A stretch of 64,000 nucleotides of DNA from Ylistrum balloti (taxonomy: Eukaryota). Position numbers and translations under genes: made by a program. This document shows positions 10,717-60,348 of the stretch, in pieces; within the stretch, counting starts at the first letter, position 1; each line of letters begins with the position of its first letter. A model generated the notes under the pieces. The model had not been told where the DNA came from. It saw only the letters and a list, made by a program, of their open reading frames with translations, and ran no database searches. The DNA is taken from the NCBI RefSeq assembly GCF_031769215.1, contig NW_026782650.1, forward strand, positions 186,001 to 250,000. The letters run 5' to 3'.

Positions 10717-13700
10717 ATGGGCATATGTTTTCCTTGTTTCGACGGAGGTTCTGATTCCTCATACGATGATAATCAAACGCGTGTAAGTTCGCATATTCCT
10801 AAATTTGTTTTTGGTTTTATGGTGTTATTTTTTAAATATTTCCGCGGACACTGTTAATACGGTCTCTGTTGTCCTCCATGTACTTTCTGTTTGACCAATT
10901 AACTGAGTGTTATGAGGTAGCGATTTGGCATACAATTTTAAGTTTAGCCCGACCATTTCTATGCATGTTTTTCTTTTTGTTTAAAATACGAAGAAGCTTT
11001 GACCACAGGTTCATGATGGATGTCGTGCCATGATCTGATGATCTGAGTTTCCCATTTTTGTACACAGTATTAATGTCAGGGAAATCTCTGTGAATAGAAA
11101 TAGCTCTCAGGTATTGCCATAGCAACATATATATAGAAAGACAGTAAGTACCCTTGCATAACTTATCTAGCGTCCCCAGCCCAGAACAAGGCTCTCCCCT
11201 TTATCTCCACCCAGATACAAAAGAAATGTATACCACTTTCCACATATAAATTTGTAACACAAACAGAAGACATTAGTTAGTCCAATGTCTTTGCTAGGTT
11301 TTGAACCTAGAACCTCTGACTCATCATTCTTACACTCTACTGATTGAACTGAATTTTTTTTTTTTTTTTTAACCTGACTAGTATGTTGTGGCAAGTGTTT
11401 TATCAGTATTATATATATATGTAAATGAAGATTCTGTACATGTACAATGTAGCATGGCTCTTCATGAAGTCACATTACACTGACAACCTGGTAACAGATC
11501 CTTACCATCACTAAACCTGGGTGTTAATCAGGGGGTTAGTTATGTATACACTTCATAAAGTCATGTTACACTGACAAGAGGTTAACCAGTCCTAACCATC
11601 ACTAAACCTGGGTATTAATCAGGGGGTTAGTTATGTATACACTTCATAAAGTCACATTACACTGACAAGAGGGTAACCAGTCCTTACCGTCAATAAAACT
11701 GAGTGTCAATCAGGGGGTTAGTTATGTATACACGTCATAAAGTCACATTACACTGACAACAGGGTAACTTGTCCTTACCATCACTAAATCTGGATGTCAA
11801 TCAGGGGGTTAGTTATGTATGTACATATAGCATGGCACTTCATGAAGTCACATTACACTGACAACCTGGTAAACAGTCCTTACCATCACTAAAACTGAGT
11901 GTCAGTTAGGGAGTCAGTACATGTATATAGCAACATGCACAGAAATTATAAACTTTATTGAAATTTATTTTTTTGTTTTAGGAGACAGAAGCTTTAAAAT
12001 ATAAGTATCAATTGTTTTAATTAATTGCCAAATGACTACAATCTAACTTTATAAAAACTTGGCCCTAGTTGCTCAAAGTTGGAAAGAGTTAATCAGTGAG
12101 TAGTGAAAAGTTTAATTTGTTGTCATGGAAGAAAACAAGGACTCGAAGGAAAACTTGCAATCCAAACCTATCACTCTGACCTCTCTCATGAAAGCTTCCT
12201 CTGTAACATGATAATAACTGTTCAAAATTCAGGTTAATTAACATTTGAAAACTTTCAATGACCACTGTTAATCCTAGCAAAGTTTTGAGCAACTAGAGCC
12301 TGATGGGACGTCAATTTTAAACTTAATTTAAGATATTGATTCTTCATAAGTGAGATTCATTGTGTAACGGGCACCTGCTGTCTTTAGGTTTGAATATCAA
12401 GAATTTTCAAGGTCTTCAGAATTCAGGTTAATTAACATTTGAAAATTTTCAATGACCACTGTTAATCCTAGCCAAGTTTTGAGCAACTAGGGCCTGATGG
12501 GACGTCAATTTTAAACTTAATTTAAGATATTGATTCTTCATAAGTGAGATTCATTGTGTAACAGTCACCTGCTGTCTTTAGTGGTGCTGTTGTTCTGCTG
12601 TTTCATACTCTTTTCTTATTGGTCAGTAAATGGTCAGTTTACTTAAGGATTGTTTCTCATTTAATGATTGCAAATTAACAGTTACAAACTTAGATAATGT
12701 TATATTTTGATAGATGTAATTTATAATTTTATTATTTTAATTTGTGCTGATATGATTGATATGAAGGAAGCAAGACGTGAGAATATGGCAGCAGCAGCCA
12801 TGAAGAGACAAGAGAATGCAGCCAACCGAGGAATCAAGGACCCAGCCTCAGTCAAACGCAAACAAGAAGCCCAAAAAAAGCTTGAAGAAGAGGAAAATAA
12901 ACGAGCCAGAATGGGAGGGGGAGGAGGAGGAGACCTTAAAGTTTGTTTTCTAAAGTTTTTTAAGATCATTTCATTTTATTGAGGAGTTTATGGTGAAATG
13001 ATTGTGTTTGTAAATTATGTGTTTAGATTCAAATTAGAAAAGAAGGCAAATATTAGTTTACATTGCCATATAGTGTGTATATATATCTATAAACATGACA
13101 ATGTTATAATGTTGTTAAAGAGCATAAGATAAGGAATAAATTTTGTCCTCTGATTATCCTGTTGGTGAATCTATTAAGAAAGATGAAATAGACTTTCTGA
13201 TCCATTCCTTAAAACTTAAGCGAAAAGGCCTTTTAGAATCTCTCAAGACACCAGCTGGAGCATTCTCACAGGAAAGACAGGCTCAAAGCATTCTCACAAG
13301 AACGATATGCACAGAATAATCTCACAAAACATTGGCTGGGAGCAGTATCACAAGAAAGATCTGCAGAGCATTCTTACAAGAAAGATGAGTACAGAGCATT
13401 CTCACAACAAAAATTGCTCAGAGCATTCTCAAAAGAAACGTTTGGTCCATGCCTTCTCACAATGGCTCAGAGCATTCTCAAAAGAAAACATTGGCTCAGA
13501 CCATTCTCACAAGAAACATCACCTCAGACCATTCTCACAAGAAACATCACCTCAGACCATTCTCACAAGAAACATCACCTCAGACCATTCTCACAAGAAA
13601 CATCACCTCAGACCATTCTCACAAGAAACATCACCTCAGACCATTCTCACAAGAAACATCACCTCAGACCATTCTCACAAGAAACATCACCTCAGACCAT

Positions 13701-13941
13701 TCTCACAAGAAACATCACCTCAGACCATTCTCACAAGAAACATCACCTCAGACCATTCTCACAAGAAACATCACCTCAGACCATTCTCACAAGAAAGGTT
13801 TGCTTAGATTTGTTGTATCTCAGAACAGGTAGCACTGTAATAAAATGTGTCTCTTGATCCATCTTGTCTCATGTTTTTAAGCTGGTCCATACATATAAGA
13901 GTGCATGTTTTTTTTTATCTTTTCAGTGGAATGTTGACTGA
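10717..13941 (+). CDS. SVIP: Small VCP/p97-interacting protein, 84 aa, 3 exons
   Basis: Exons 10717-10782, 12767-12940, 13927-13941. MGICFPCFDGGSDSSYDDNQTR/EARRENMAAAAMKRQENAANRGIKDPASVKRKQEAQKKLEEEENKRARMGGGGGGDLK/WNVD*. The MGxCFPC acylation motif, R-x5-AAxxR VIM-like motif and C-terminal L-K-W-x-V match SVIP. Confidence 0.93.
11445..11935. repeat. 91-bp tandem repeat, ~5 copies, in SVIP intron 1
   Basis: The tcat(a/g)aagtca motif recurs with registers 11461, 11552, 11643, 11734 and 11839. Confidence 0.9.
12226..12581. repeat. Tandem duplication of ~160 bp (194-bp offset)
   Basis: attcaggttaattaacatttgaaa...cacctgctgtctttag at 12227 and again at 12421, near identical. Confidence 0.9.
13255..13796. 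repeat. 28-bp minisatellite (cagaccattctcacaagaaacatcacct) in SVIP intron 2
   Basis: 10 perfect units from 13497 to 13776 plus a partial unit to 13796. Degenerate gagcattctcacaagaaa units extend back to ~13255. Confidence 0.95.
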
Positions 13942-19800: not shown

Positions 19801-20834
19801 TCACATAATACATGGTCAATGATATAAGTGATATATACCATGTAGTTTGTTCAGGCTCCATAGACATCTTGGTACAAACATATAACACTAGCATGGTAAG
19901 CAGTTTTCCAACACGCCTATGCAAAGATTACCATAGGGAAGGATACAGCAGCGTTGACAAATACTCACCTCCCTTCTGTTCAAGTTTCAGAAGAATTTTC
20001 TGGTACCTGTACACATTGTCTTCTACTAATTTTGATAGTTCTTGGACATATAAATTCATTAAGAAGACCTGTAAAATCATCGAAAATAAAAGCCTCACGA
20101 AAATGAGAGATTTTACAGTATGGTGAAGTTGAAATATCGGCATTGATATAAATAGATTTGGAATTCATTTCATTTCATTTATACCTTTTTGACTGATGCA
20201 TACCTTCTCACCTTTTATAATTTCAGACATGTTAGTAATTGGAAAGGGTATGGCAACGGACAAGGTAAACCCTGATATCCAGATTTATATGAAAAAAAAG
20301 GGCATCAATGTAGAAATTTTACCAACAGTAAGTACTGGTCAGGGAAAGAATGATCTGTCTCATGGTTCTCTCTCTTACTTTCCACTAATTTCAAAAATTT
20401 TAATTCCTCATCAGATATTCAAAAATCGAAAGAAATCAAGGTGCTATTCTCTTGTGTGTCTTTTGTACAATCATTTAATAGTATTGCAGCATGTCCGTAT
20501 CAATTTACTGGTAATATTTAAGAAAAAAGAACAAAGATGAAATTTCAATTTATATAAACATGTGACAAAAATGAAGACCTCAAAATGATGGATGCTATGA
20601 TCTCTCTGGGTATTCTTCTTAATTTGTGTCAGTGTTTGTTAAAATAAATGATATTAATACAGTATTTCATCAGTCTATCACATGTTATGTGATATTTACA
20701 CCTTAATTTATTGTTTGTTTCAGGAGGAGGCCTGTGGTCTCTTTAACATGTTAAGTGCAGAAGATAGACATGTCGCAGCAGCACTCATCCCTCCTGAAAA
20801 GATTCCTTTTGATAGTGACAAGGTTTCTTTGTGA
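16838..20834 (+). CDS. NDUFAF3: NADH dehydrogenase (complex I) assembly factor 3, Mth938/AAMDC-like domain, 173 aa, 5 exons
   Basis: Exons 16838-16896, 17943-18126, 19676-19742, 20227-20327, 20724-20834 (522 nt, in phase). Arg-rich, acid-free N-terminus (MTLTSRALWHFSRRLMPCSS, mitochondrial targeting-like). Motifs ISSFSNLGF...VVGPITVFPNTVLHWNV, LFYMLEPKLDMLVIGKG and GINVEILPTEEACGLFNML...VAAALIPP match NDUFAF3. Confidence 0.93.
17090..17590 (-). mobile_element. Two tandem tRNA-derived SINE-like elements (copies B and C) in NDUFAF3 intron 1
   Basis: B: TAGCTCGCTCGGTTAAGCG..CTAGAAA..GGTTCGAATCC (~17272-17220). C: TAGCTTGATCGGTTGAG..CTAGTAA..GGTTTGAATCC (~17525-17471). Both share the 5' flank taaccctggtaaaatactagc. 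Stems are degenerate, so these are not intact tRNA genes. Confidence 0.65.
18876..19007. repeat. 72-bp-offset tandem duplication
   Basis: taatgagccacatttctgactgaacttttttt(t)tcatacc at 18895 and 18967. Confidence 0.85.
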
Positions 20835-25070: not shown

Positions 25071-25808
25071 GCTTTTTCAATGAAAAGTAATTGTTTCGGG
25101 TGAATAAAGCAGGTTGTAACGACTGGGGAAACTATTTCCAAACTCTAGAAAGTAAATGTATGAAGTCCGTCTGTGGATTGAAAATTAAACGTCTGGAAAG
25201 TTGATACCATCGAAAACCATTCATGCAACCTAGCAAGACTTCTGTAGAGGAAATTGCGCGCTTAAATTGTGAATAATTTAGAAGATGTCAGATTACGCAA
25301 AATGACATTGGGAAATATGATGTTTCGGATAATAAGAACACTTTACTAGCGTATTCCAGACACATAAACGCTAGCACGATCAATGGACTTTCCACAGATT
25401 GGAATGGTCTATTTATGTCAGACGTTACGGCAGAGAGTCGAGAGTACGGGGTGGTGCCACGCCTTTCTGCTTCTCGGGTTCCTGTCCAGCAGACTCGAAA
25501 AACAATATCCTGAAATATCGTTAACATAAATTCGTACATTAACAACATACACATTTTGTAAGCATCTACCCAATTACCACGCCTAGGGTAATTATATCTT
25601 TTAAATATGGCAATCGTTAGGTCCATTTTGAAATCGTACATGTTAACGCCTTTGTTGGATATATGCATTTTTCAAAGGTCATACAGATTAGCCCATAGCC
25701 AAACTGGACGGCTAACCGGAAACCTTTGACTGTACGACTGATTACGAGATTGTATAAAAGAAAATATCAACAGCTATATACAGTAAAATCCAATAATGAA
25801 TTAACTTG

Positions 25809-25849
25809 CACCATACATCTGTTTCGTCCTTTTAGGACTCGGCAGTGAT
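25809..25849 (-). ncRNA. Degenerate solo hammerhead motif of the same family as the 33.7-kb array
   Basis: Minus strand: AUCA CUGCCGA GUCC-UAAAA-GGAC GAAAC AGAU GUA^UGGUG. The core has A6 changed to C and the stem III loop is no longer palindromic. Confidence 0.65.
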
Positions 25850-26346
25850 AGTAAGGCTGCAATTTTAACACTAAGATGCAGCTGAGGAAAATAAAAATTG
25901 ATCGAAAGAGGTGAAAAAAAACTGAATGGGAAAAACAATATTAAATATCCGTGATTGTATTTATTGTCAATATGAAAGCAATTTGGGAGCCAGATAAATA
26001 ATCATGACGTCCTAACTGACAATGAATACAATCGGACCGATATTTAATGGTTAAATAAGTACGTAGCATTTTTCAAGAAGACTGCACTCGTTGAAACTAT
26101 TATTGAAATGACGGTAAGCAGAGGAAAACAGTAAAGAACCACCCACCCATCCCCTTTCGCCCCCCCCCCCCCCCCCCAAAAAAAAAAAAAAAAAATAAAT
26201 AAATAAATAAAAAATCCAGTGCCTTGGTGCTAGGTACATGTGATAGAAATGTGAAAGTTGCAATCACATTTGTACATTATAGATGACCTACAACTATTTA
26301 ACATGTACACTACTACCTACTTAATAAATGTCAAGTGCCCGGGTAC

Positions 26347-32697: not shown

Positions 32698-33702
32698 TCT
32701 GGATATAAGAAATAGTAACGTCAATGCCTTTAATGCTTTATCAGCTCTGTGTACACTGAATGGTTACGATGGACCATCGACCGACTTTTTCCCGAATGAC
32801 AGCTTCAAGCAGTGGATATTGAAGTATTTTAGCTCATCCCTATATACATGTCCTTCCGCTTAATAACTTAAGCCCCAATATGAAACTATCCTACTTCCTT
32901 CCTTTATGTAACACAGGATAGAAATACAGCGTCAATGACGCATGTCTGTTGACGACAACTGCGCTCCCTGAACACCCCATCAGCTAGCGACTATAGGTTA
33001 CTGATGCTGGGAGCACCACAAGTCCACATCCCGCTTATAATTGTTCCCATTTATACTCCCGCTACGCTATGTAGCATTCAAACCGTTGTGCACATGTGTT
33101 CTGTGTTTTATTTAACAATGGTGAATGTAAATAAACACTGGTGACTAGTACATATACGGCTACTGGGTCATCGCATCAAAGCAGTCACTGCCTAATTATC
33201 CTCCCAGAACAAACACCTGCCCCTTTTTCTGTTTTAATGCCAAATCCATCATCATTTCATATGATGTCTGCCAGCAATCAAAAACTAAATACAACGATAA
33301 TTACTATATAGAGTTAGCTCTCCCACAGGCGCTGGTCACAATTTAACTTCTCGGGGACGTTGACTGTTTCGTCTTCATACGAAAACACTTTGGCATATAC
33401 AAATGATGTGTTACACGTACTGTTATTTCGCGGGAAATAGCTATAACGAGGATATCCCTTTTTGACACGCTAAACATCGTTTTATTGCAGCAGCAGAACG
33501 AAACAAACAATACATATAACACGAAATAACGAAAAAATGAAACAGTTGTTCATCAATCCAGGTATTTTGCATCGCGAGGTGAAATAACGACAACAATACC
33601 CATCTTGGTTGCTTCTAAATGTTGTACAAATGACATACGTTAGCATTACCTTTAAACACAGTTTAGAATTAATTACGTAGAACAAAATAATAAATCCAAC
33701 TG

Positions 33703-34166
33703 CATCATACAGCTGTTTCGTCCTTCTAGGAATCGTCAGTGATGCTACATCATACAGCTGTTTCGTCCTTCTAGGAATCGTCAGTGATGCTACATCATAC
33801 AGCTGTTTCGTCCTTCTAGGACACGTCAGTGATGTTACATCATACAGCTGTTTCGTCCTTCTAGGAATCGTCAGTGATGCTACATCATACAGCTGTTTCG
33901 TCCTTCTAGGACACGTCAGTGATGCTACATCATACAGCTGTTTCGTCCTTCTAGGAATCGTCAGTGATGCTACATCATACAGCTGTTTCGTCCTTCTAGG
34001 ACTCGTCAGTGATGTTACATCATACAGCTGATGCTACATCATACAGCTGTTTCGTCCTTCTAGGACTCGTCGTTGATGTTACATCATACAGCTGTTTCGT
34101 CATTCTGGGACTCGTCAGTGATGCTACATCATACAGCTGTTTCGTCATTCTGGGACTCGTCGATGT
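33703..34166 (-). ncRNA. Tandem array of 10 minimal type I hammerhead ribozyme motifs (45-bp unit)
   Basis: Plus-strand units start at 33703, 33748, 33793, 33838, 33883, 33928, 33973, (19-bp partial at 34018), 34037, 34082 and 34127. Minus-strand unit: (G/A)CAUCA CUGACGA GUCC-UAGAA-GGAC GAAAC AGCU GUA^UGAUG. Stem I, II and III pairings and the core nucleotides are all visible. Confidence 0.9.
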
Positions 34167-34409
34167 TGTTCAGGACCAAATCTTTGAAACCTGGAAGTAG
34201 TCTGAGAAAAATCTGAAGTGATAAAAATATTTTTAAAAATATAAATGGGTAGGTGCACTGGCTCCATAATACAATACATTTCGTAATTTGATATTTGAAG
34301 AACTAAAAGTCCACTAGAAGGGTCTACCACATTCTATCTCAAAGGTTATACGATAGACACATAAGCACCTTATAATACCATTTAGCCGGATACAGAAGTC
34401 ACTTCCTGT

Positions 34410-41860: not shown

Positions 41861-44456
41861 ACCCAATATCTTATTTAGTAATTTGAATTTAGTACATAAT
41901 GTATTCATGATCAGCCCCACACTATTTTTGTTCCTATGTACAAATGTACCAGTTACAGGATTTAAAGGCTTTCACTCGGTAGTCTCCTGTCTGACCTATT
42001 TGGGTGGAATGACACATCAATCATTTCCCGTCATTTCCATGGCTTTTATCCCTGCTGGAGAGTATTTGTAATCTGATGGATCATAACTTTAGCATTTTTT
42101 TTTTCTGTTTCTGCGTCGTAATTTAAATACATACTTTGATCCTTAACACATGTGTTGGATTTCTTGACACGGTTTATTTAGTGTAGTTACAGTCATGTAT
42201 ATTAATTGTCATGTTTATCTGTCCACATTTCTTTACTTATTGATTTCTTTATACTTAATACATTGAATTAAAAGTGAAAAAACCTTTTAAGGAATTTTAT
42301 TTGTGTAATATATTTTGTTACTGTTCAGCTACAGGTATGATGACCCATGTTAAAGTCGTCACTAGTAAGTAATCCCTAGTACATTACCTGCACTAGAGAC
42401 AAGTGGGAGATATCGTATTGTATTGTAGTCAGTTGGAGCACCTGTTGACCATAAACAACTCAATAGTGGAAGTCCCATCTCAACACCACTTTCCTTTCAG
42501 GATTTGCAAGATGATAATAATGGCAGTCACCTTCCAAAGAGACCATTCAAAAACAGTAGTTTAGGATTGATGGATGCCATAACACGTTACATCCTAAAAA
42601 AGTGATGGAACAAGGAGTTTAAAAATGGATCAATGCATATAGGTCTGTCCCATCATACCACCTTCACTGAACTCAAGGCTAATCATGCAACCATAGGTTT
42701 TCAATGAAAAGGTAACAGAATTGATTAATGCATGTTTATTTACGATACTCTAGACTATATCACAGCACAATAAGGAATAATATATACATGTAGGATATAT
42801 CATAAAAGCACCGTTATAATGCTTGCATAATAAATATAGTAACATAGAAAATACTTAATGGTGAATTAAACAAAAATGCAAGTGTTATAAAAGTTATCAA
42901 ACCTAATATCTTAGGTACAGTTTCCATTACAGATATATCTCATCATCTGTATGTACACACTGTATATCACTGATATAGCTTTGTAATGTTTATCTACTGA
43001 TAAATGTCCCTTTATAGTGACTTGATAATGCCCTGAAAGTTGTATTTAACAGGTTTCTATTTTTCAATATTTTCGTTGATGGAATAAAAAACATGAAAAA
43101 CTGGAACATTGAAAATATTATCCAGCTTCTGTGAAATATACATCCCTTTTGCATCAAGTTTTTCAGTAAAACACAGAAAAAATTTGAATCATTGAAAAAA
43201 AAACAACCATTAAAGCAATTCATTGTATTTATGAAAGAGAAAACAAGCGTTTAATATTCATAAAAGAGAAAAGTTTTTATATATTTATGAAAGAAAAAAA
43301 TGCCATCCTTAACCTAAGCAATCTTGCATATAAAGATCTGTTTAATACACTACAAATAACTACAGACATGTGAGACAACAGTCATATCATGCATCTACAG
43401 GTAACATCTACATAATTAAATAAAAGGCTGAAAGAGTCATTTGTGTGTTTGTTGCCAAAATTATCTCTTCCAGTGAGTAATGTTAACTTCGGACATATTA
43501 TTCCCAGGGTTGTAATGACATCATACAGAGGTAATTGGTTATTTTTCTCCCAAACTTTGTGATCATCAATGACTTGCAAAACCAAAAAAATAAAAATTGA
43601 TGATGTTATCCAAATGCAGTTGTTGACCTAAATAAAATTATGATACAACCTGAATGTAAACAGTGACAGCAGGGAGCATGTTGACTGTGTACGGAAAAAC
43701 AGATTTATCTTCCTCTAGCAAATATGGGAATGCACCTGTGAAGCATGGAAGAAAACAATATCAGTGATCCATCTGCTATCAGTTTGTATTAAACATAACT
43801 TACTGTCAGAAGTGTAGAGTGTGATTAATACCCATATATAACAAAATCACTTGTCTGCCGTGAGACTGAAGGTAAATACTTATTATGGTTCCTCACAATT
43901 TTTTTTATGCTTGTATAAAGTTTTATTTTGGCACATATGGTCAGCAGCATAAAGATAATGGTGAGACTGATATTAATATTGAAAAGGAATGCTTTTGTTC
44001 CCAATATAGACTTAGGTGTTGGACCATTTCTCAATATCTAAATTCAGTATCCCAGTGTGATGAAGGAAGTCACACTTATCAGCTTAATTTATATGTTAGA
44101 CTGATGTACATCCATACTATTTTGATGCTAACACCTGTTCATTAAATGCATTGACAGTGTGCAGGTAATTATAGAAGTAATCATGATACATCAAACATCA
44201 GTGATACAAGGACCTATCAAAATACAGATATGTATAACATTCACAGACTGATCATGTCATCAGACATATAGACCAGCAGAAAACCTGTGGATGACAAAAT
44301 TTCAGAGCAAGATAGATAACATAAATATTGATCCCTGATTTATATACAGTAGTTAAAGGCCTTTACAAAAGGAAATTAAATAACAAATTCTGTTACACTA
44401 CACTAATATCTGTATGTACTTGGTCACCTCATTCAATATCTCACCTTCTCCAACTA

Positions 44457-45730
44457 GGAAAGTGGGTTAAATACAACATCTCACTTTCTTTGACAGGAAA
44501 GTTGGGTTACATACAACATCTCGCTCTATCCTAGAGGGAAGGTGAGTTACATACAACATCCAACTAAACCTGACAGGGAAGGTTGGTAACATACAACACC
44601 CTACTTTACCTGACAGGAAAGGTGGATTACATACAACATCCTGCTTTACCCAACAGGAAAGGTGGGTTACATACAACATCCTGCTTTACCCAACAGGAAA
44701 GGTGAGTTACATACAATTTCATACTTTACCCAACAGGAAAGGTGGGTTACATACAACATCCTACTTTACCTACAGGAAAGGTGGATTATATACAACACCC
44801 TACTTTACCTGACAGGAAAGGTGAGTTACATATAACACCCTACTTTACCTGACAGGAAAGGTGAGTTACATACAACACCCTACTTAACCTGACAGGAAAG
44901 GTGAGTTACATACAACACCCTACTTTACCTGACAGGAAAGGTGAGTTACATACAACACCCTACTTTACCTGACAGGAAAGGTGAGTTACATACAACACTC
45001 TACTTAACCTGACAGGAAAGGTGGATTACATACATCTCTTTCTATCCTAAGGGAAGGTAAGTTACATACAACATCCTACTTTACCTGACAGGAAAGGTGG
45101 GTTACATACAACATCCTACTTTACCTGACAGGAAAGGTGAGTTACATACAGCATCTCACTATATCCTAGAGGGAAGGTGAGTTACATACAACACCCTACT
45201 TTACTTGACAGGGAAGGTGAGTTACATACAACACCCTACTTAACCTGACAGAAAAGATGGATTACATACAACATCTCTTTCTATCCTAGAGGGAAGGTGA
45301 GTTACATACAACATCCTACTTTACTTGACAGGAAAGGTGGGTTACATACAATATCATACTTTACCCAACAGGAAAGGTGAGTTACATACAGCATCTCACT
45401 ATATCCTAGAGGGAAGGTGAGTTGCATACAACACCCTACTTAACCTGACAGGGAAGGTGAGTTACATACAACACCCTACTTTACCTGACAGGAAAGGTGG
45501 GTTACATACAACACCCTACTTTACCTGACAGGAAAGGTGAGTTACATACAACATCTCTTTCTATCCTAGAGGGAAAGTGAGTTACATACAACACCCTACT
45601 TTACCTGACAGGAAATGTGGGTAACATACAACATCCCACATTTACTGACAGGGAAGGCGGGTTACATACAACATCTCACTTTCCCTGACAAGGAAGGTGG
45701 ATTACATACATATACAACATCTCACTTTTT
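44457..45730. repeat. 40-bp minisatellite (gaaaggtgagttacatacaacaccctactttacctgacag), ~32 copies
   Basis: Continuous 39-41-bp periodicity with several subtypes (ctactttacctgacagg versus tctttctatcctagaggg). Confidence 0.95.
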
Positions 45731-57248: not shown

Positions 57249-57976
57249 CTGAATCACACTCACTACCATAAAGACTAACCGTCTGAATCACACTCACTAC
57301 CATACAGACTACCCCCTCTGAATCACACTCACTACCATACAGACTACCCTCTCTTAATCACACTCACTACCATACAGACTACCCCCTCTGAATCACACTC
57401 ACTATCATACAGACTACCCCCTCTGAATCACACTCACTACCATACAGACTACCCCCTCTGAATCACACTCACTACCATACAGAATACCCCCTCTGAATCA
57501 CACTCACTACCATACAGACTACCCCCTCTGAATCACACTCACTATCATACAGACTACCCCCTCTGAATCACACTCACTACCATACAGACTACCCCCTCTG
57601 AATCACACTCACTACCAAACAGACTACCCTCTGAATCACACTCACTACCAAACAGACTGCCCTCTGAATCACACTCACTACCATAGAGACTACCCTCTGA
57701 ATCACACTCACTACCACACAGACTACCCCCTCTGAATTACACTCACTACCAAACAGACTAACCCTCTGAATCACACTCACTACCATACAGACTAACCCCC
57801 TCTGAATCACACTCACTACCACACAGACTAACCCCCTCTGAATCACACTCACTACCATACAGACTAACCCCCTCTGAATCACACTCACTACCATACAGAC
57901 TACCCTCTGAATCACACTCACTACCATACAGACTACCCCCTCTGAATCACACTCACTACCAAACAGACTAACCCTC
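57249..57976. repeat. 35-bp minisatellite (ctgaatcacactcactaccatacagactaccccct), ~21 copies
   Basis: 34-36-bp units that differ mainly in C-run length. Confidence 0.95.
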
Positions 57977-59562: not shown

Positions 59563-60348
59563 TACAGACGACGCATGCTTCAGAAGTACAAGTAGACTAG
59601 GACTGCTTCAGAGGACACTTCAGAAAAGTAAAACTCGACTATAGAGAATGCTTACTTCAGAAAAGTAAGTCTCGACTATGGCCGCTATAGAGAATGCCTA
59701 CTTCAGAAAAGCAAGTATCGACTATGGCCGCTATAGAGAATGTTTACTTAAGAAATGGAAGTCTCGATTATGGTCGCTATAGAGGACGTTTATTTCAGAA
59801 AAGTAAATCTCTATCATGACCGCTATAGAGAATGCTTACTTCAGAAAAGTAAGTCCCGACTATGACAGCTACAGAGCTCGCTTATTTCAGAAAAGTTAAT
59901 CCCGACTATGACAGCTACAGAGCTCGCTTATTTCAGAAAAGTTAATCCCGACTATGACAGCTATAGAAAATGCTGATTTCGGAAAAACTTAGTCTCGATT
60001 ATGATCGCTTCAGTGGACGCTTAATTCAAGAACATTAGTATCGACTATGACCGCTATAGAGGATACTTTTTTCAGAAGTACGAGTAGACTAGGACCGTTT
60101 CAGTGGACGCTCACTTCAGAAAAGTATAATCAACTATGACCGTTACAACGGACACGTGCTTCAGGAAAGTTAGTCCTAACTATGACCGTGTTACAGAGGA
60201 CGCTTATTTCAGAAAATTATGGCTCTACTATGACCGCTATAGAGAATGCTTACTTCAGAAAAGTAAGTCTCGACTATCGCCGCTTCAGAAGACACTTCAG
60301 AAAAGTAAGTTTCGACTATTACCGCTACAGAGGTCGCTTACTTCAAAT
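59563..60348. repeat. 46-bp hairpin-forming minisatellite, ~17 diverged copies
   Basis: Consensus gaccgctatagagaatgcttacttcagaaaagtaagtctcgactat. Internal inverted repeat cttactt-cagaa-aagtaag (e.g. 59651-59669). Confidence 0.9.

What the first reader, a model, noticed from the sequence alone, without database searches (positions are those of the whole stretch)
33703..34166. A minisatellite made entirely of hammerhead ribozymes (45-nt unit, 10 copies)
On the minus strand every unit is a complete minimal type I hammerhead with essentially no spacer. Stem I is (G/A)CAUCA/UGAUG(U), the core is CUGACGA...GAAA, stem II is GUCC/GGAC, and stem III is the 8-nt palindrome ACAGCUGU with GUA as the cleavage triplet. 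Minimal hammerheads with palindromic stem III are known from Penelope-like elements, where they cleave as dimers. Tandem non-LTR retrozymes are known too, but as I recall with monomers of roughly 150-400 nt. A ribozyme-only 45-nt monomer would be far smaller. Transcription through the array could be chopped into 45- or 90-nt RNAs with 2',3'-cyclic phosphate and 5'-OH ends, which are substrates for RtcB-type circularisation. This is a candidate minimal retrozyme or self-processing small-RNA cassette.
Basis: partly seen in the sequence, partly recalled or inferred. Interest (0 to 1): 0.9.

Follow-up and report, generated by a model that had tools for sequence, protein, structure and literature searches.

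The report
Decayed tandem array of hammerhead ribozymes
A 464-base stretch is ten head-to-tail copies of a 45-base self-cutting RNA motif (hammerhead ribozyme) that grew out of the single ribozyme of a small jumping-gene relic; it is one of hundreds of such arrays in this animal genome, and here only one copy still looks able to cut.

Summary
The repeat is real: window 33703-34166, minus strand, period 45. It holds nine full units, one 19-nt deleted unit and one degenerate 5' unit. "Every unit is a complete hammerhead" is wrong. Only unit 34022-33978 passes Rfam's hammerhead threshold (50.3 vs 48.5 bits). The others carry A9U (2 units), G10.1U (5), C3U4 to AC (1), a weakened stem II (1) or deletions.

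The array is not free-standing. It is the expanded ribozyme module of a ~400-nt non-coding dispersed retroelement, with a 5' arm at 34340-34167 and a 3' arm at 33702-33621. Most copies of that element carry one hammerhead; about a third of an unbiased sample carry 45-nt arrays. The genome holds 6,208 exact unit-to-unit junction words (control 0).

Dead variants are amplified as readily as intact ones. Core, stems and loops vary equally and stem changes mostly break pairs. So the arrays behave as DNA minisatellites, not as a selected RNA-processing cassette. No RNA data were available.

The scan has found the same 45-nt arrays before on other DNA of this genome. A 2026 preprint lists ribozyme tandem-repeat families down to 51 bp and derives them from Penelope-like element ends.

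One puzzle remains: interior array units are closer to the ancestral ribozyme than their flanks predict.

The parts
34167..34340 (-). 5' arm of the host non-coding retroelement. Relative to full-length copies it carries an internal deletion of ~110 nt.
   Evidence: Aligns to the 5' arms of other copies. BLAST to the natural full-length copy L038 gives 73.7% over 171 nt. The start motif GAGATAGAATGTGGTAGACC lies at 34340-34321.
34132..34166 (-). Degenerate first (edge) hammerhead unit. The core reads C-GACGA (U4 missing) and stem II is weakened.
   Evidence: Five mismatches to the canonical unit over positions 9-45.
34087..34131 (-). Unit with an intact CUGACGA and GAAA core, but stem II reduced to GUC/GAC.
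   Evidence: RNAfold does not form stem II.
34042..34086 (-). Dead unit: C3U4 changed to AC (AACGACGA).
34023..34041 (-). 19-nt deleted unit, consisting of the stem I hairpin plus GCUGUA. It supplies the 5' strand of helix III and the GUA cleavage triplet for the next unit.
   Evidence: The same deleted unit occurs only 5 times in 4 loci genome-wide.
33978..34022 (-). The only fully canonical hammerhead unit. The predicted cis cleavage is after A34023, between 34023 and 34022.
   Evidence: Rfam RF00008 scores 50.3 bits against a gathering score of 48.5 over 33980-34030. The three-way-junction fold is the MFE.
33708..33977 (-). Six units in the order G10.1U, A9U, G10.1U, A9U, G10.1U, G10.1U: an alternation that ends in two consecutive G10.1U units.
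   Evidence: Rfam scores the A9U units 33932-33888 and 33842-33798 at 41.5 and 43.3 bits and the last G10.1U unit 33752-33708 at 38.5 bits, all below the gathering score. G10.1U is seen in 7 of 431 sampled units, 5 of them here.
33703..33707 (-). Closing UGAUG (the 1.x strand of stem I), shared with single-copy elements.
33621..33702 (-). 3' arm of the host element, ending in the family's ...TTTGTACAA terminus.
   Evidence: Alignment A1.

Best explanation
The region is a DNA minisatellite that arose by tandem amplification of the single minimal hammerhead module of an old, ~400-nt non-coding retroelement. That element has the layout 5' arm, hammerhead, 3' arm. It has a fixed 3' end, variable 5' truncation and occasional head-to-tail copies, which are Penelope-like-element or retrozyme-like habits.

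Shown:
- the array's anatomy and the host element
- the genome-wide family of such arrays
- the absence of selection for catalysis
- local amplification of dead variants

Inferred:
- Growth is by unequal exchange, replication slippage or repair-templated copying at the DNA level.
- If the minus strand is transcribed, only unit 34022-33978 should self-cleave efficiently. It would fold as a cis type III hammerhead whose helix III is made by the two flanking palindromes, cutting after A34023.
- The G10.1U and A9U units should be strongly impaired. This rests on established hammerhead mutagenesis and was not tested here.
- This locus has no function of its own.
For: Anatomy and ribozyme scoring.

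Host element:
- Conserved arms flank arrays at unrelated loci.
- The 5' arm has at least 753 candidate copies.
- Typical copies hold one hammerhead between the same arms.
- A natural full-length copy is 397 nt.
- The window's arms are mapped.

Family size:
- 6,208 exact 25-nt unit-junction words, control 0.
- 719 exact hammerhead-to-3'-arm junction words.
- In 20 loci sampled by that word, 7 are arrays and 13 single.

No selection for catalysis:
- Core 6.1% variant units, loops 6.4-10.8%, N7 4.6%.
- Stems: 415 broken, 157 one-sided, 15 compensatory cells.
- 24% of 431 units are intact by sequence.
- CpG transitions hit G8, G12 and C11.1.
- The commonest unit is dead in 14 of 22 arrays, and intactness is uncorrelated with array homogeneity.

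Local amplification here:
- G10.1U is nearly private to this array and occurs five times.
- Units are 94.8% alike, while the arms are at most 77% identical to any other copy.
- Edge units are older than interior ones, as expected for arrays that turn over by unequal exchange.

Literature: local amplification of Penelope-like element termini into ribozyme-bearing minisatellites is proposed in doi 10.64898/2026.07.22.740005.
Against: - No RNA data were available, so transcription and cleavage are untested.
- Purely neutral in-situ growth does not explain why array units are closer to the ancestral hammerhead than expected. The hammerhead/arm divergence ratio is 0.76 in arrays and 1.32 in single copies (p = 0.001).
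- It does not explain why arrays carry only 0.54 array-wide fixed differences.
- It does not explain why interior units are nearer the ancestor than edge units.
- Shared variants among arrays suggest some exchange or shared ancestry between arrays. These are A15.1U in 13 arrays against 1 of 19 scorable single copies, and the 19-nt unit at 4 loci.
- The autonomous partner was not found. Twelve sampled RT/GIY-YIG loci share no arm sequence with this element.
Confidence: 0.72

Rival explanations
1. One reading: a functional self-processing cassette or minimal retrozyme. Transcripts of this array would be cut into 45- or 90-nt RNAs, which are circularised and act as small RNAs or transposition intermediates.
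For: - The canonical unit is a bona fide hammerhead.
- Some other arrays hold runs of sequence-competent units: L010 23/32, L011 18/43 and L024 17/25 adjacent pairs.
- Array units are less decayed than single copies.
Against: - At this locus no two adjacent units are intact, so no monomer can be released.
- There is no sign of selection on the core or on pairing.
- Dead units are amplified.
- These are minimal hammerheads without loop-loop contacts, and such motifs cleave poorly in vitro even as dimers (PMC4209133).
- There is no RNA evidence.
Confidence: 0.05
2. Arrays are made or refreshed through RNA. Hammerhead-only RNAs (monomers, multimers or circles) from intact arrays or active elements would be copied by a Penelope-like reverse transcriptase. 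The copies would be added at resident hammerhead sites by homology-guided priming or repair, and would decay afterwards.
For: - Interior units are nearer the ancestral sequence than the flanks or edge units predict.
- The period equals the ribozyme almost exactly: 42 nt plus 3.
- A third of elements are expanded.
- Some variants are shared between arrays.
- Intact RT plus GIY-YIG ORFs exist in the genome.
Against: - Dead variants are amplified locally and higher-order patterns are private to each array.
- Both array junctions are always in register with the arms, so there is no footprint that distinguishes RNA from DNA copying.
- The divergence contrast is modest (about 1.6-fold), rests on short arms, and has a DNA-level alternative in homology-dependent unequal exchange or ectopic conversion.
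- In the one Penelope-like element tested in vitro, hammerhead cleavage was not needed for insertion (PMC11167929).
Confidence: 0.12
3. Ectopic gene conversion or repair-templated copying between the hundreds of arrays keeps them alike. This would be concerted evolution across loci, so this array's units were partly imported from other arrays as DNA.
For: - The A15.1U allele occurs in 13 arrays but in 1 of 19 scorable single copies.
- An identical 19-nt deleted unit occurs at 4 loci.
- Arrays have few fixed differences.
- The arms tree is a star, and arrays do not form a clade: 7 label changes against 9.3 expected from shuffles, with 30 of 500 shuffles as low.
Against: Exchange among equally old arrays cannot by itself lower the mean distance to the ancestor. 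Array-private variants dominate. It was not directly tested.
Confidence: 0.25
4. Chance resemblance or assembly artefact.
For: None found.
Against: - Rfam E = 4e-8 for the whole window.
- 6,208 junction words against 0 in the control.
- Contigs of an independent run span both array borders.
Confidence: 0.01

Closest known systems
Non-LTR retrozymes: tandem repeats with type I hammerheads in metazoan genomes (Cervera & de la Pena 2020, PMC7229834; Li, Clavereau & Pollet 2026 preprint, doi 10.64898/2026.07.22.740005)
   Same: Both are head-to-tail DNA repeats in which each unit carries a hammerhead. Both are AT-rich and found in an animal genome that also holds Penelope-like elements. The preprint's proposed origin, from Penelope-like element terminal sequence followed by local amplification, fits this locus.
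   Different: - The unit here is 45 nt, the ribozyme alone plus 3 nt. Published units are 150-450 bp (PMC7229834) or 51-972 bp (2026 preprint).
- The hammerhead is minimal, without loop-loop contacts.
- The array sits inside a ~400-nt dispersed element rather than being the repeated element itself.
- Expression and circles are untested.
- At this locus the preprint's operational criterion, two consecutive complete hammerheads, is not met.
Minimal hammerheads of Penelope-like elements (Cervera & de la Pena 2014, PMC4209133; Lunse, Weinberg & Breaker 2017, not held in the library)
   Same: Both have the type I layout, short stems, no tertiary loop contacts, and a helix III reduced to a palindrome that needs a second copy. 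Both are massively repeated and fast-decaying in an invertebrate genome.
   Different: - Helix II here is 5 bp with no bulged base between A9 and G10.1, whereas many metazoan PLE hammerheads have 7-8 bp plus a bulge.
- No RT/GIY-YIG ORF adjoins this element, and the sampled PLE loci carry other hammerheads.
- Tandem 45-nt spacing lets neighbouring palindromes form helix III in cis, so the dimer requirement disappears.
Hammerhead-bearing satellites and SINE-like repeats: newt satellite 2 and Schistosoma Sm-alpha (as reviewed in PMC6765202 and PMC7761336)
   Same: A ribozyme embedded in dispersed or tandem non-coding repeats of animals.
   Different: Those units are ~330 nt with cargo sequence and are known to be transcribed and to cleave. 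Here the unit is ribozyme-only and no activity data exist.
Transposable-element-derived minisatellites: internal tandem expansions inside dispersed elements
   Same: A short internal segment of a mobile element is amplified in situ, with array-private variants, higher-order periodicity and older edge units.
   Different: The amplified segment coincides almost exactly with a complete catalytic RNA motif, and about a third of sampled family members are expanded.

Membership tests
Hammerhead ribozyme (Rfam clan CL00010; RF00008) | Conserved core C3 U4 G5 A6 N7 G8 A9 and G12 A13 A14 | tested here: met
   Met in units 34131-34087, 34022-33978 and the four G10.1U units. Not met in the two A9U units, in 34086-34042, in the 19-nt unit or in the first unit.
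Hammerhead ribozyme (Rfam clan CL00010; RF00008) | Three helices around the core, with an A15.1-U16.1 pair and H17 at the cleavage site | tested here: met
   For 33978-34030 the MFE is the three-way junction, with a 7-8 bp helix III formed between neighbouring palindromes and GUA at the site.
Hammerhead ribozyme (Rfam clan CL00010; RF00008) | Score at or above the curated gathering threshold | tested here: met
   One unit only: 50.3 vs 48.5 bits. The others score 38.5-44.5.
Hammerhead ribozyme (Rfam clan CL00010; RF00008) | Self-cleavage | not testable with these tools
   No RNA runs were offered. An in vitro assay is needed.
Penelope-like-element minimal hammerhead | Type I layout, helix III absent or palindromic, no loop-loop tertiary contacts | tested here: met
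   ACAGCUGU with no loop; loops of 3 nt. Definition from PMC4209133.
Penelope-like-element minimal hammerhead | Lies in the pseudo-LTR of an element encoding RT plus GIY-YIG endonuclease | tested here: not met
   - There is no ORF of 100 aa or more within 5 kb of the array.
- The host element is ~400 nt and non-coding.
- Twelve RT/GIY-YIG loci of this genome share no arm sequence with it.
- A more distant partner cannot be excluded.
Penelope-like-element minimal hammerhead | Long helix II (7-8 bp) with an unpaired base after A9, typical of many metazoan PLE hammerheads | tested here: not met
   Helix II is GUCCU/AGGAC, 5 bp with no bulge.
Non-LTR retrozyme | Tandem repeat with a complete hammerhead in consecutive units | tested here: not met
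   At this locus no two adjacent units are intact. The feature is met in other arrays of the family, such as L010, L011 and L024.
Non-LTR retrozyme | Monomer of 150-450 bp (PMC7229834), or 51-972 bp (2026 preprint), that carries sequence besides the ribozyme | tested here: not met
   The unit is 45 nt: 42 nt of ribozyme plus 3.
Non-LTR retrozyme | Expressed as linear and circular monomer RNAs | not testable with these tools
   Only one DNA run holds the locus.
Minisatellite evolving by unequal exchange | Array-private variants, higher-order periodicity and more diverged edge units | tested here: met
   - Units alternate between G10.1U and A9U.
- G10.1U is nearly private to this array.
- The first unit has 5 mismatches against 0-2 for the interior units.
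- Family-wide the edge effect has p = 0.001.

The most novel reading that the evidence does not exclude
The 45-nt arrays are not only slippage products. They would be kept near the ancestral, cleavage-competent sequence by an RNA route. In this reading, hammerhead-only RNAs cut out of intact arrays (45-nt monomers or 90-nt double-hammerhead circles) are copied by a Penelope-like reverse transcriptase and re-added at resident hammerhead sites. That would make this the smallest retrozyme-like replicator known, one consisting of nothing but its ribozyme. The window's array would be a decayed product of that process.
Probability: 0.1. Interest if true: 0.85.

Novelty: new member of a known kind. 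Interest (0 to 1): 0.4.

Why it matters
This shows that the ribozyme module of a Penelope-type non-autonomous retroelement can itself become a satellite. There are thousands of ribozyme-only 45-nt units at hundreds of loci, at the lower size limit of ribozyme-bearing repeats.

Tandem spacing also converts a dimer-dependent minimal type I hammerhead into a self-sufficient cis type III fold. That gives a natural test bed for how minimal hammerheads work in arrays.

The evidence says most of this is neutral DNA turnover, and the window's copy is largely dead, so by itself it is an ordinary fossil. The open point worth a specialist's time is why interior units stay closer to the ancestral ribozyme than their flanks. 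It bears on whether any RNA-mediated or homology-driven maintenance acts on such arrays.

Tried and rejected
- **Expression:** The look-up of sequencing runs offered one DNA run and no RNA run. Laying its contigs confirmed both borders but cannot show RNA, and the repeat collapses in short-read contigs.
- **Autonomous partner:** a GIY-YIG (PF01541) scan found 51 loci, including RT+GIY-YIG ORFs. None of the 12 fetched shares the arms, and three carry different minimal hammerheads. Loci that matched only the 3' arm have no upstream long ORF.
- **Array-bearing subfamily:** the tree of arms is an unresolved star (0 of 28 inner branches starred). The array label needs 7 changes against 9.3 for shuffles, with 30 of 500 shuffles as low, so the test is inconclusive.
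- **Young subfamily for the window's element:** rejected. No genomic relative of its 5' arm exceeds 77% identity over more than 90 nt.
- **First divergence estimate:** the multiple-alignment estimate of arm divergence (0.196 against 0.058 for the hammerhead units) was inflated by gaps. The pairwise, mismatch-only estimate on 3' arms gives a smaller but still significant contrast.
- **Literature:** no paper in the searchable library describes 45-nt hammerhead-only arrays or hammerhead satellites in bivalves. Lunse et al. 2017 is not held.
- **Whole-array fold:** the array has many competing nested pairings between distant palindromes, so it says little about activity.
- **Host organism:** not verified here. 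Earlier notes of this scan call it a scallop or bivalve. The Atlas look-up of a Penelope-like ORF shows only that the protein family is eukaryotic, with mostly animal phyla among its members.

Full report
**1. What is there**

Read on the minus strand, window 34166-33703 is a head-to-tail repeat of period 45. Splitting after each CAGCUGUA gives the following units:
- a degenerate first unit (34166-34132)
- 34131-34087
- 34086-34042
- a 19-nt unit lacking core and stem II (34041-34023)
- 34022-33978
- six more units down to 33708
- a closing UGAUG (33707-33703)

The canonical unit is UGAUG-UAR-CAUCA / CUGACGA / GUCCU-AGA-AGGAC / GAA / ACAGCUGU / A. That is stem I with a 3-nt loop, the C3-A9 core, a 5-bp stem II with a 3-nt loop, G12-A14, an 8-nt palindrome, and A17.

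Rfam finds one match above its gathering score in the whole 64-kb window: Hammerhead_3, 33980-34030, minus strand, 50.3 bits against 48.5, E = 4e-8. With relaxed thresholds the other units score 38.5-44.5 bits.

**2. Topology**

In the array, each palindrome can pair with the next one. The segment between two palindromes is then a complete type III hammerhead in cis. That fold is how Rfam aligned it, and it is the minimum-free-energy structure (-16.4 kcal/mol, z = -3.2).

In this fold a unit's core cuts at that unit's own 5' border. For the one intact unit the predicted site is therefore between 34023 and 34022, not 33978/33977.

**3. State of the units**

Only 34022-33978 is fully canonical. 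The defects of the others are:
- A9 to U in two units
- G10.1 to U, breaking the conserved G10.1-C11.1 pair, in four full units
- C3U4 to AC in one unit
- stem II reduced to 3 bp in one unit, where it is not formed in the predicted fold
- deletions in two units

From established hammerhead mutagenesis these changes should be strongly impairing, but this was not tested here. No two adjacent units are intact, so the locus cannot release a 45-nt monomer. The G10.1U and A9U units alternate. G10.1U occurs in 7 of 431 units sampled genome-wide, five of them here. So a dead unit was amplified locally.

**4. The array sits inside a mobile element**

Arrays at unrelated loci share the same flanks. The 5' arm has at least 753 candidate copies in the 648.5-Mb genome. 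The typical copy has exactly one hammerhead between the arms. A natural full-length copy is 397 nt.

The element has a fixed 3' end (...TTTTGTACAAT), variable 5' truncation and occasional head-to-tail copies. These habits resemble Penelope-like elements and retrozymes.

In the window the element runs from about 34340 to 33621. Its 5' arm has lost ~110 nt internally. A second, single-hammerhead, decayed copy lies at about 25930-25740.

**5. Family size**

The 25-nt word that only a unit-to-unit junction can contain occurs 6,208 times (control 0). The hammerhead-to-3'-arm junction word occurs 719 times. Of 20 loci sampled by that word, 7 are arrays of 2 to about 35 units and 13 are single.

RT plus GIY-YIG ORFs of Penelope type are present in the genome. 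None of the 12 fetched shares the arms.

**6. Is the ribozyme under selection in arrays?**

I analysed 431 in-register units from 22 arrays.
- Catalytic positions vary in 6.1% of units, loops in 6.4-10.8% and N7 in 4.6%.
- Stem changes are 415 broken, 157 one-sided and 15 compensatory cells.
- 53% of units keep the nine core bases and 24% meet all sequence criteria.
- CpG transitions are among the commonest core-killing changes.
- The commonest unit is dead in 14 of 22 arrays, and intactness does not track array homogeneity.

This is the signature of DNA-level amplification and neutral decay, not of a maintained RNA-processing device.

**7. An unexplained feature**

The canonical unit equals the commonest base at all 37 compared positions among 25 single copies, so it is the family's ancestral sequence. 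Array units are nearer to it than expected:
- 3' arms are equally diverged in array-bearing elements (0.098) and single elements (0.090). Hammerhead distance is 0.074 in arrays against 0.118 in singles. The hammerhead/arm ratios are 0.76 and 1.32, p = 0.001.
- The unbiased subset shows the same direction.
- Arrays carry only 0.54 array-wide fixed differences on average.
- 5'-edge units are more diverged than interior ones: 3.9 against 2.3 mismatches of 37, p = 0.001.
- In the window the arms have no genomic relative above 77% identity, while the units are 96-97% canonical.

Uniform variation across core and loops argues against selection for catalysis. Three candidates remain:
- homology-dependent unequal exchange that favours the majority unit
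- ectopic conversion among arrays, suggested by shared variants (A15.1U in 13 arrays against 1 of 19 scorable single copies; an identical 19-nt unit at 4 loci)
- RNA-templated addition of fresh units

The tree of arms is an unresolved star and does not decide between these. Caveats: the arms are short, unit recognition was filtered, and the first array set was chosen by likeness to the window's units.

**8. Comparison with what is known**

Minimal, dimer-dependent hammerheads are known from Penelope-like elements (PMC4209133). Tandem type I hammerhead repeats of 150-450 bp are known as non-LTR retrozymes with circular RNAs (PMC7229834).

A 2026 preprint reports retrozyme consensus lengths of 51-972 bp. 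It proposes that such arrays arise from Penelope-like element termini by local amplification and unequal crossover. I found no description of 45-nt ribozyme-only arrays, or of hammerhead satellites in bivalves, in the searchable library. Lunse et al. 2017 could not be read.

The same arrays have been noted by this scan on other DNA of this genome. Those follow-ups reached the same main reading, which I reached independently before reading them.

**9. Verdict**

The locus is a largely dead, locally amplified member of a large family of hammerhead minisatellites born inside a small Penelope-type non-autonomous element. It sits at the extreme short end of a known kind.

Expression, cleavage and circularisation remain untested. 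The relative 'youth' of interior units is the one point that could still make the family more than neutral DNA.

Noticed in passing
window 25740-25930 (- strand): A second copy of the same ~400-nt element family, with a single decayed hammerhead. Its core reads CUGCCGA and its palindrome is broken to CAGAUGUA. It serves as a handy unexpanded control in the same window.
   Followed up: partly
window 20438-20472 (+ strand): An isolated 35-nt match (91%) to the 3' terminus of the same element family, probably a severely 5'-truncated insertion.
   Followed up: no
L002, L003, L005, L006 and window 34023-34041: An identical 19-nt deleted unit (UGAUGUAGCAUCAGCUGUA) recurs at 4 loci, 5 exact hits genome-wide. 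The deleted 26 nt lie between two CA dinucleotides. It could be recurrent microhomology deletion or exchange between arrays.
   Followed up: partly
13 arrays: L008, L009, L011, L015-L019, L021, L024-L026, L029: An A15.1-to-U allele (GAAUCAGCUG), which should kill the ribozyme, is interspersed with GAAA units in 13 arrays but seen in only 1 of 19 scorable single-copy elements.
   Followed up: partly
L058:1170-1500: A different array built from half-hammerheads, with units of roughly 60 nt containing ...ACGAGACUUAGAAGCGUAAAACAGCUGUAUG..., directly upstream of the same 3' arm.
   Followed up: no
L071:928-2357: A Penelope-like locus where the GIY-YIG-containing ORF is followed immediately by a 190-aa ORF with C2H2 zinc fingers. 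A different minimal hammerhead (CUGAUGA...GAAA) lies about 200 nt further on.
   Followed up: partly
G000:C422:240415-261997: At least five RT/GIY-YIG ORFs, four with 755-aa open frames, spaced ~5.3 kb apart on one strand. This is a tandem array of an apparently intact Penelope-like element.
   Followed up: no
window 44456-45710, 57249-57974, 59639-60345, 13466-13796: Four other minisatellites: 40 nt x 31, 35 nt x 21, 46 nt x 15 and 28 nt x 12. None matches an Rfam family. The window is minisatellite-rich, with no ORF above 166 aa.
   Followed up: no
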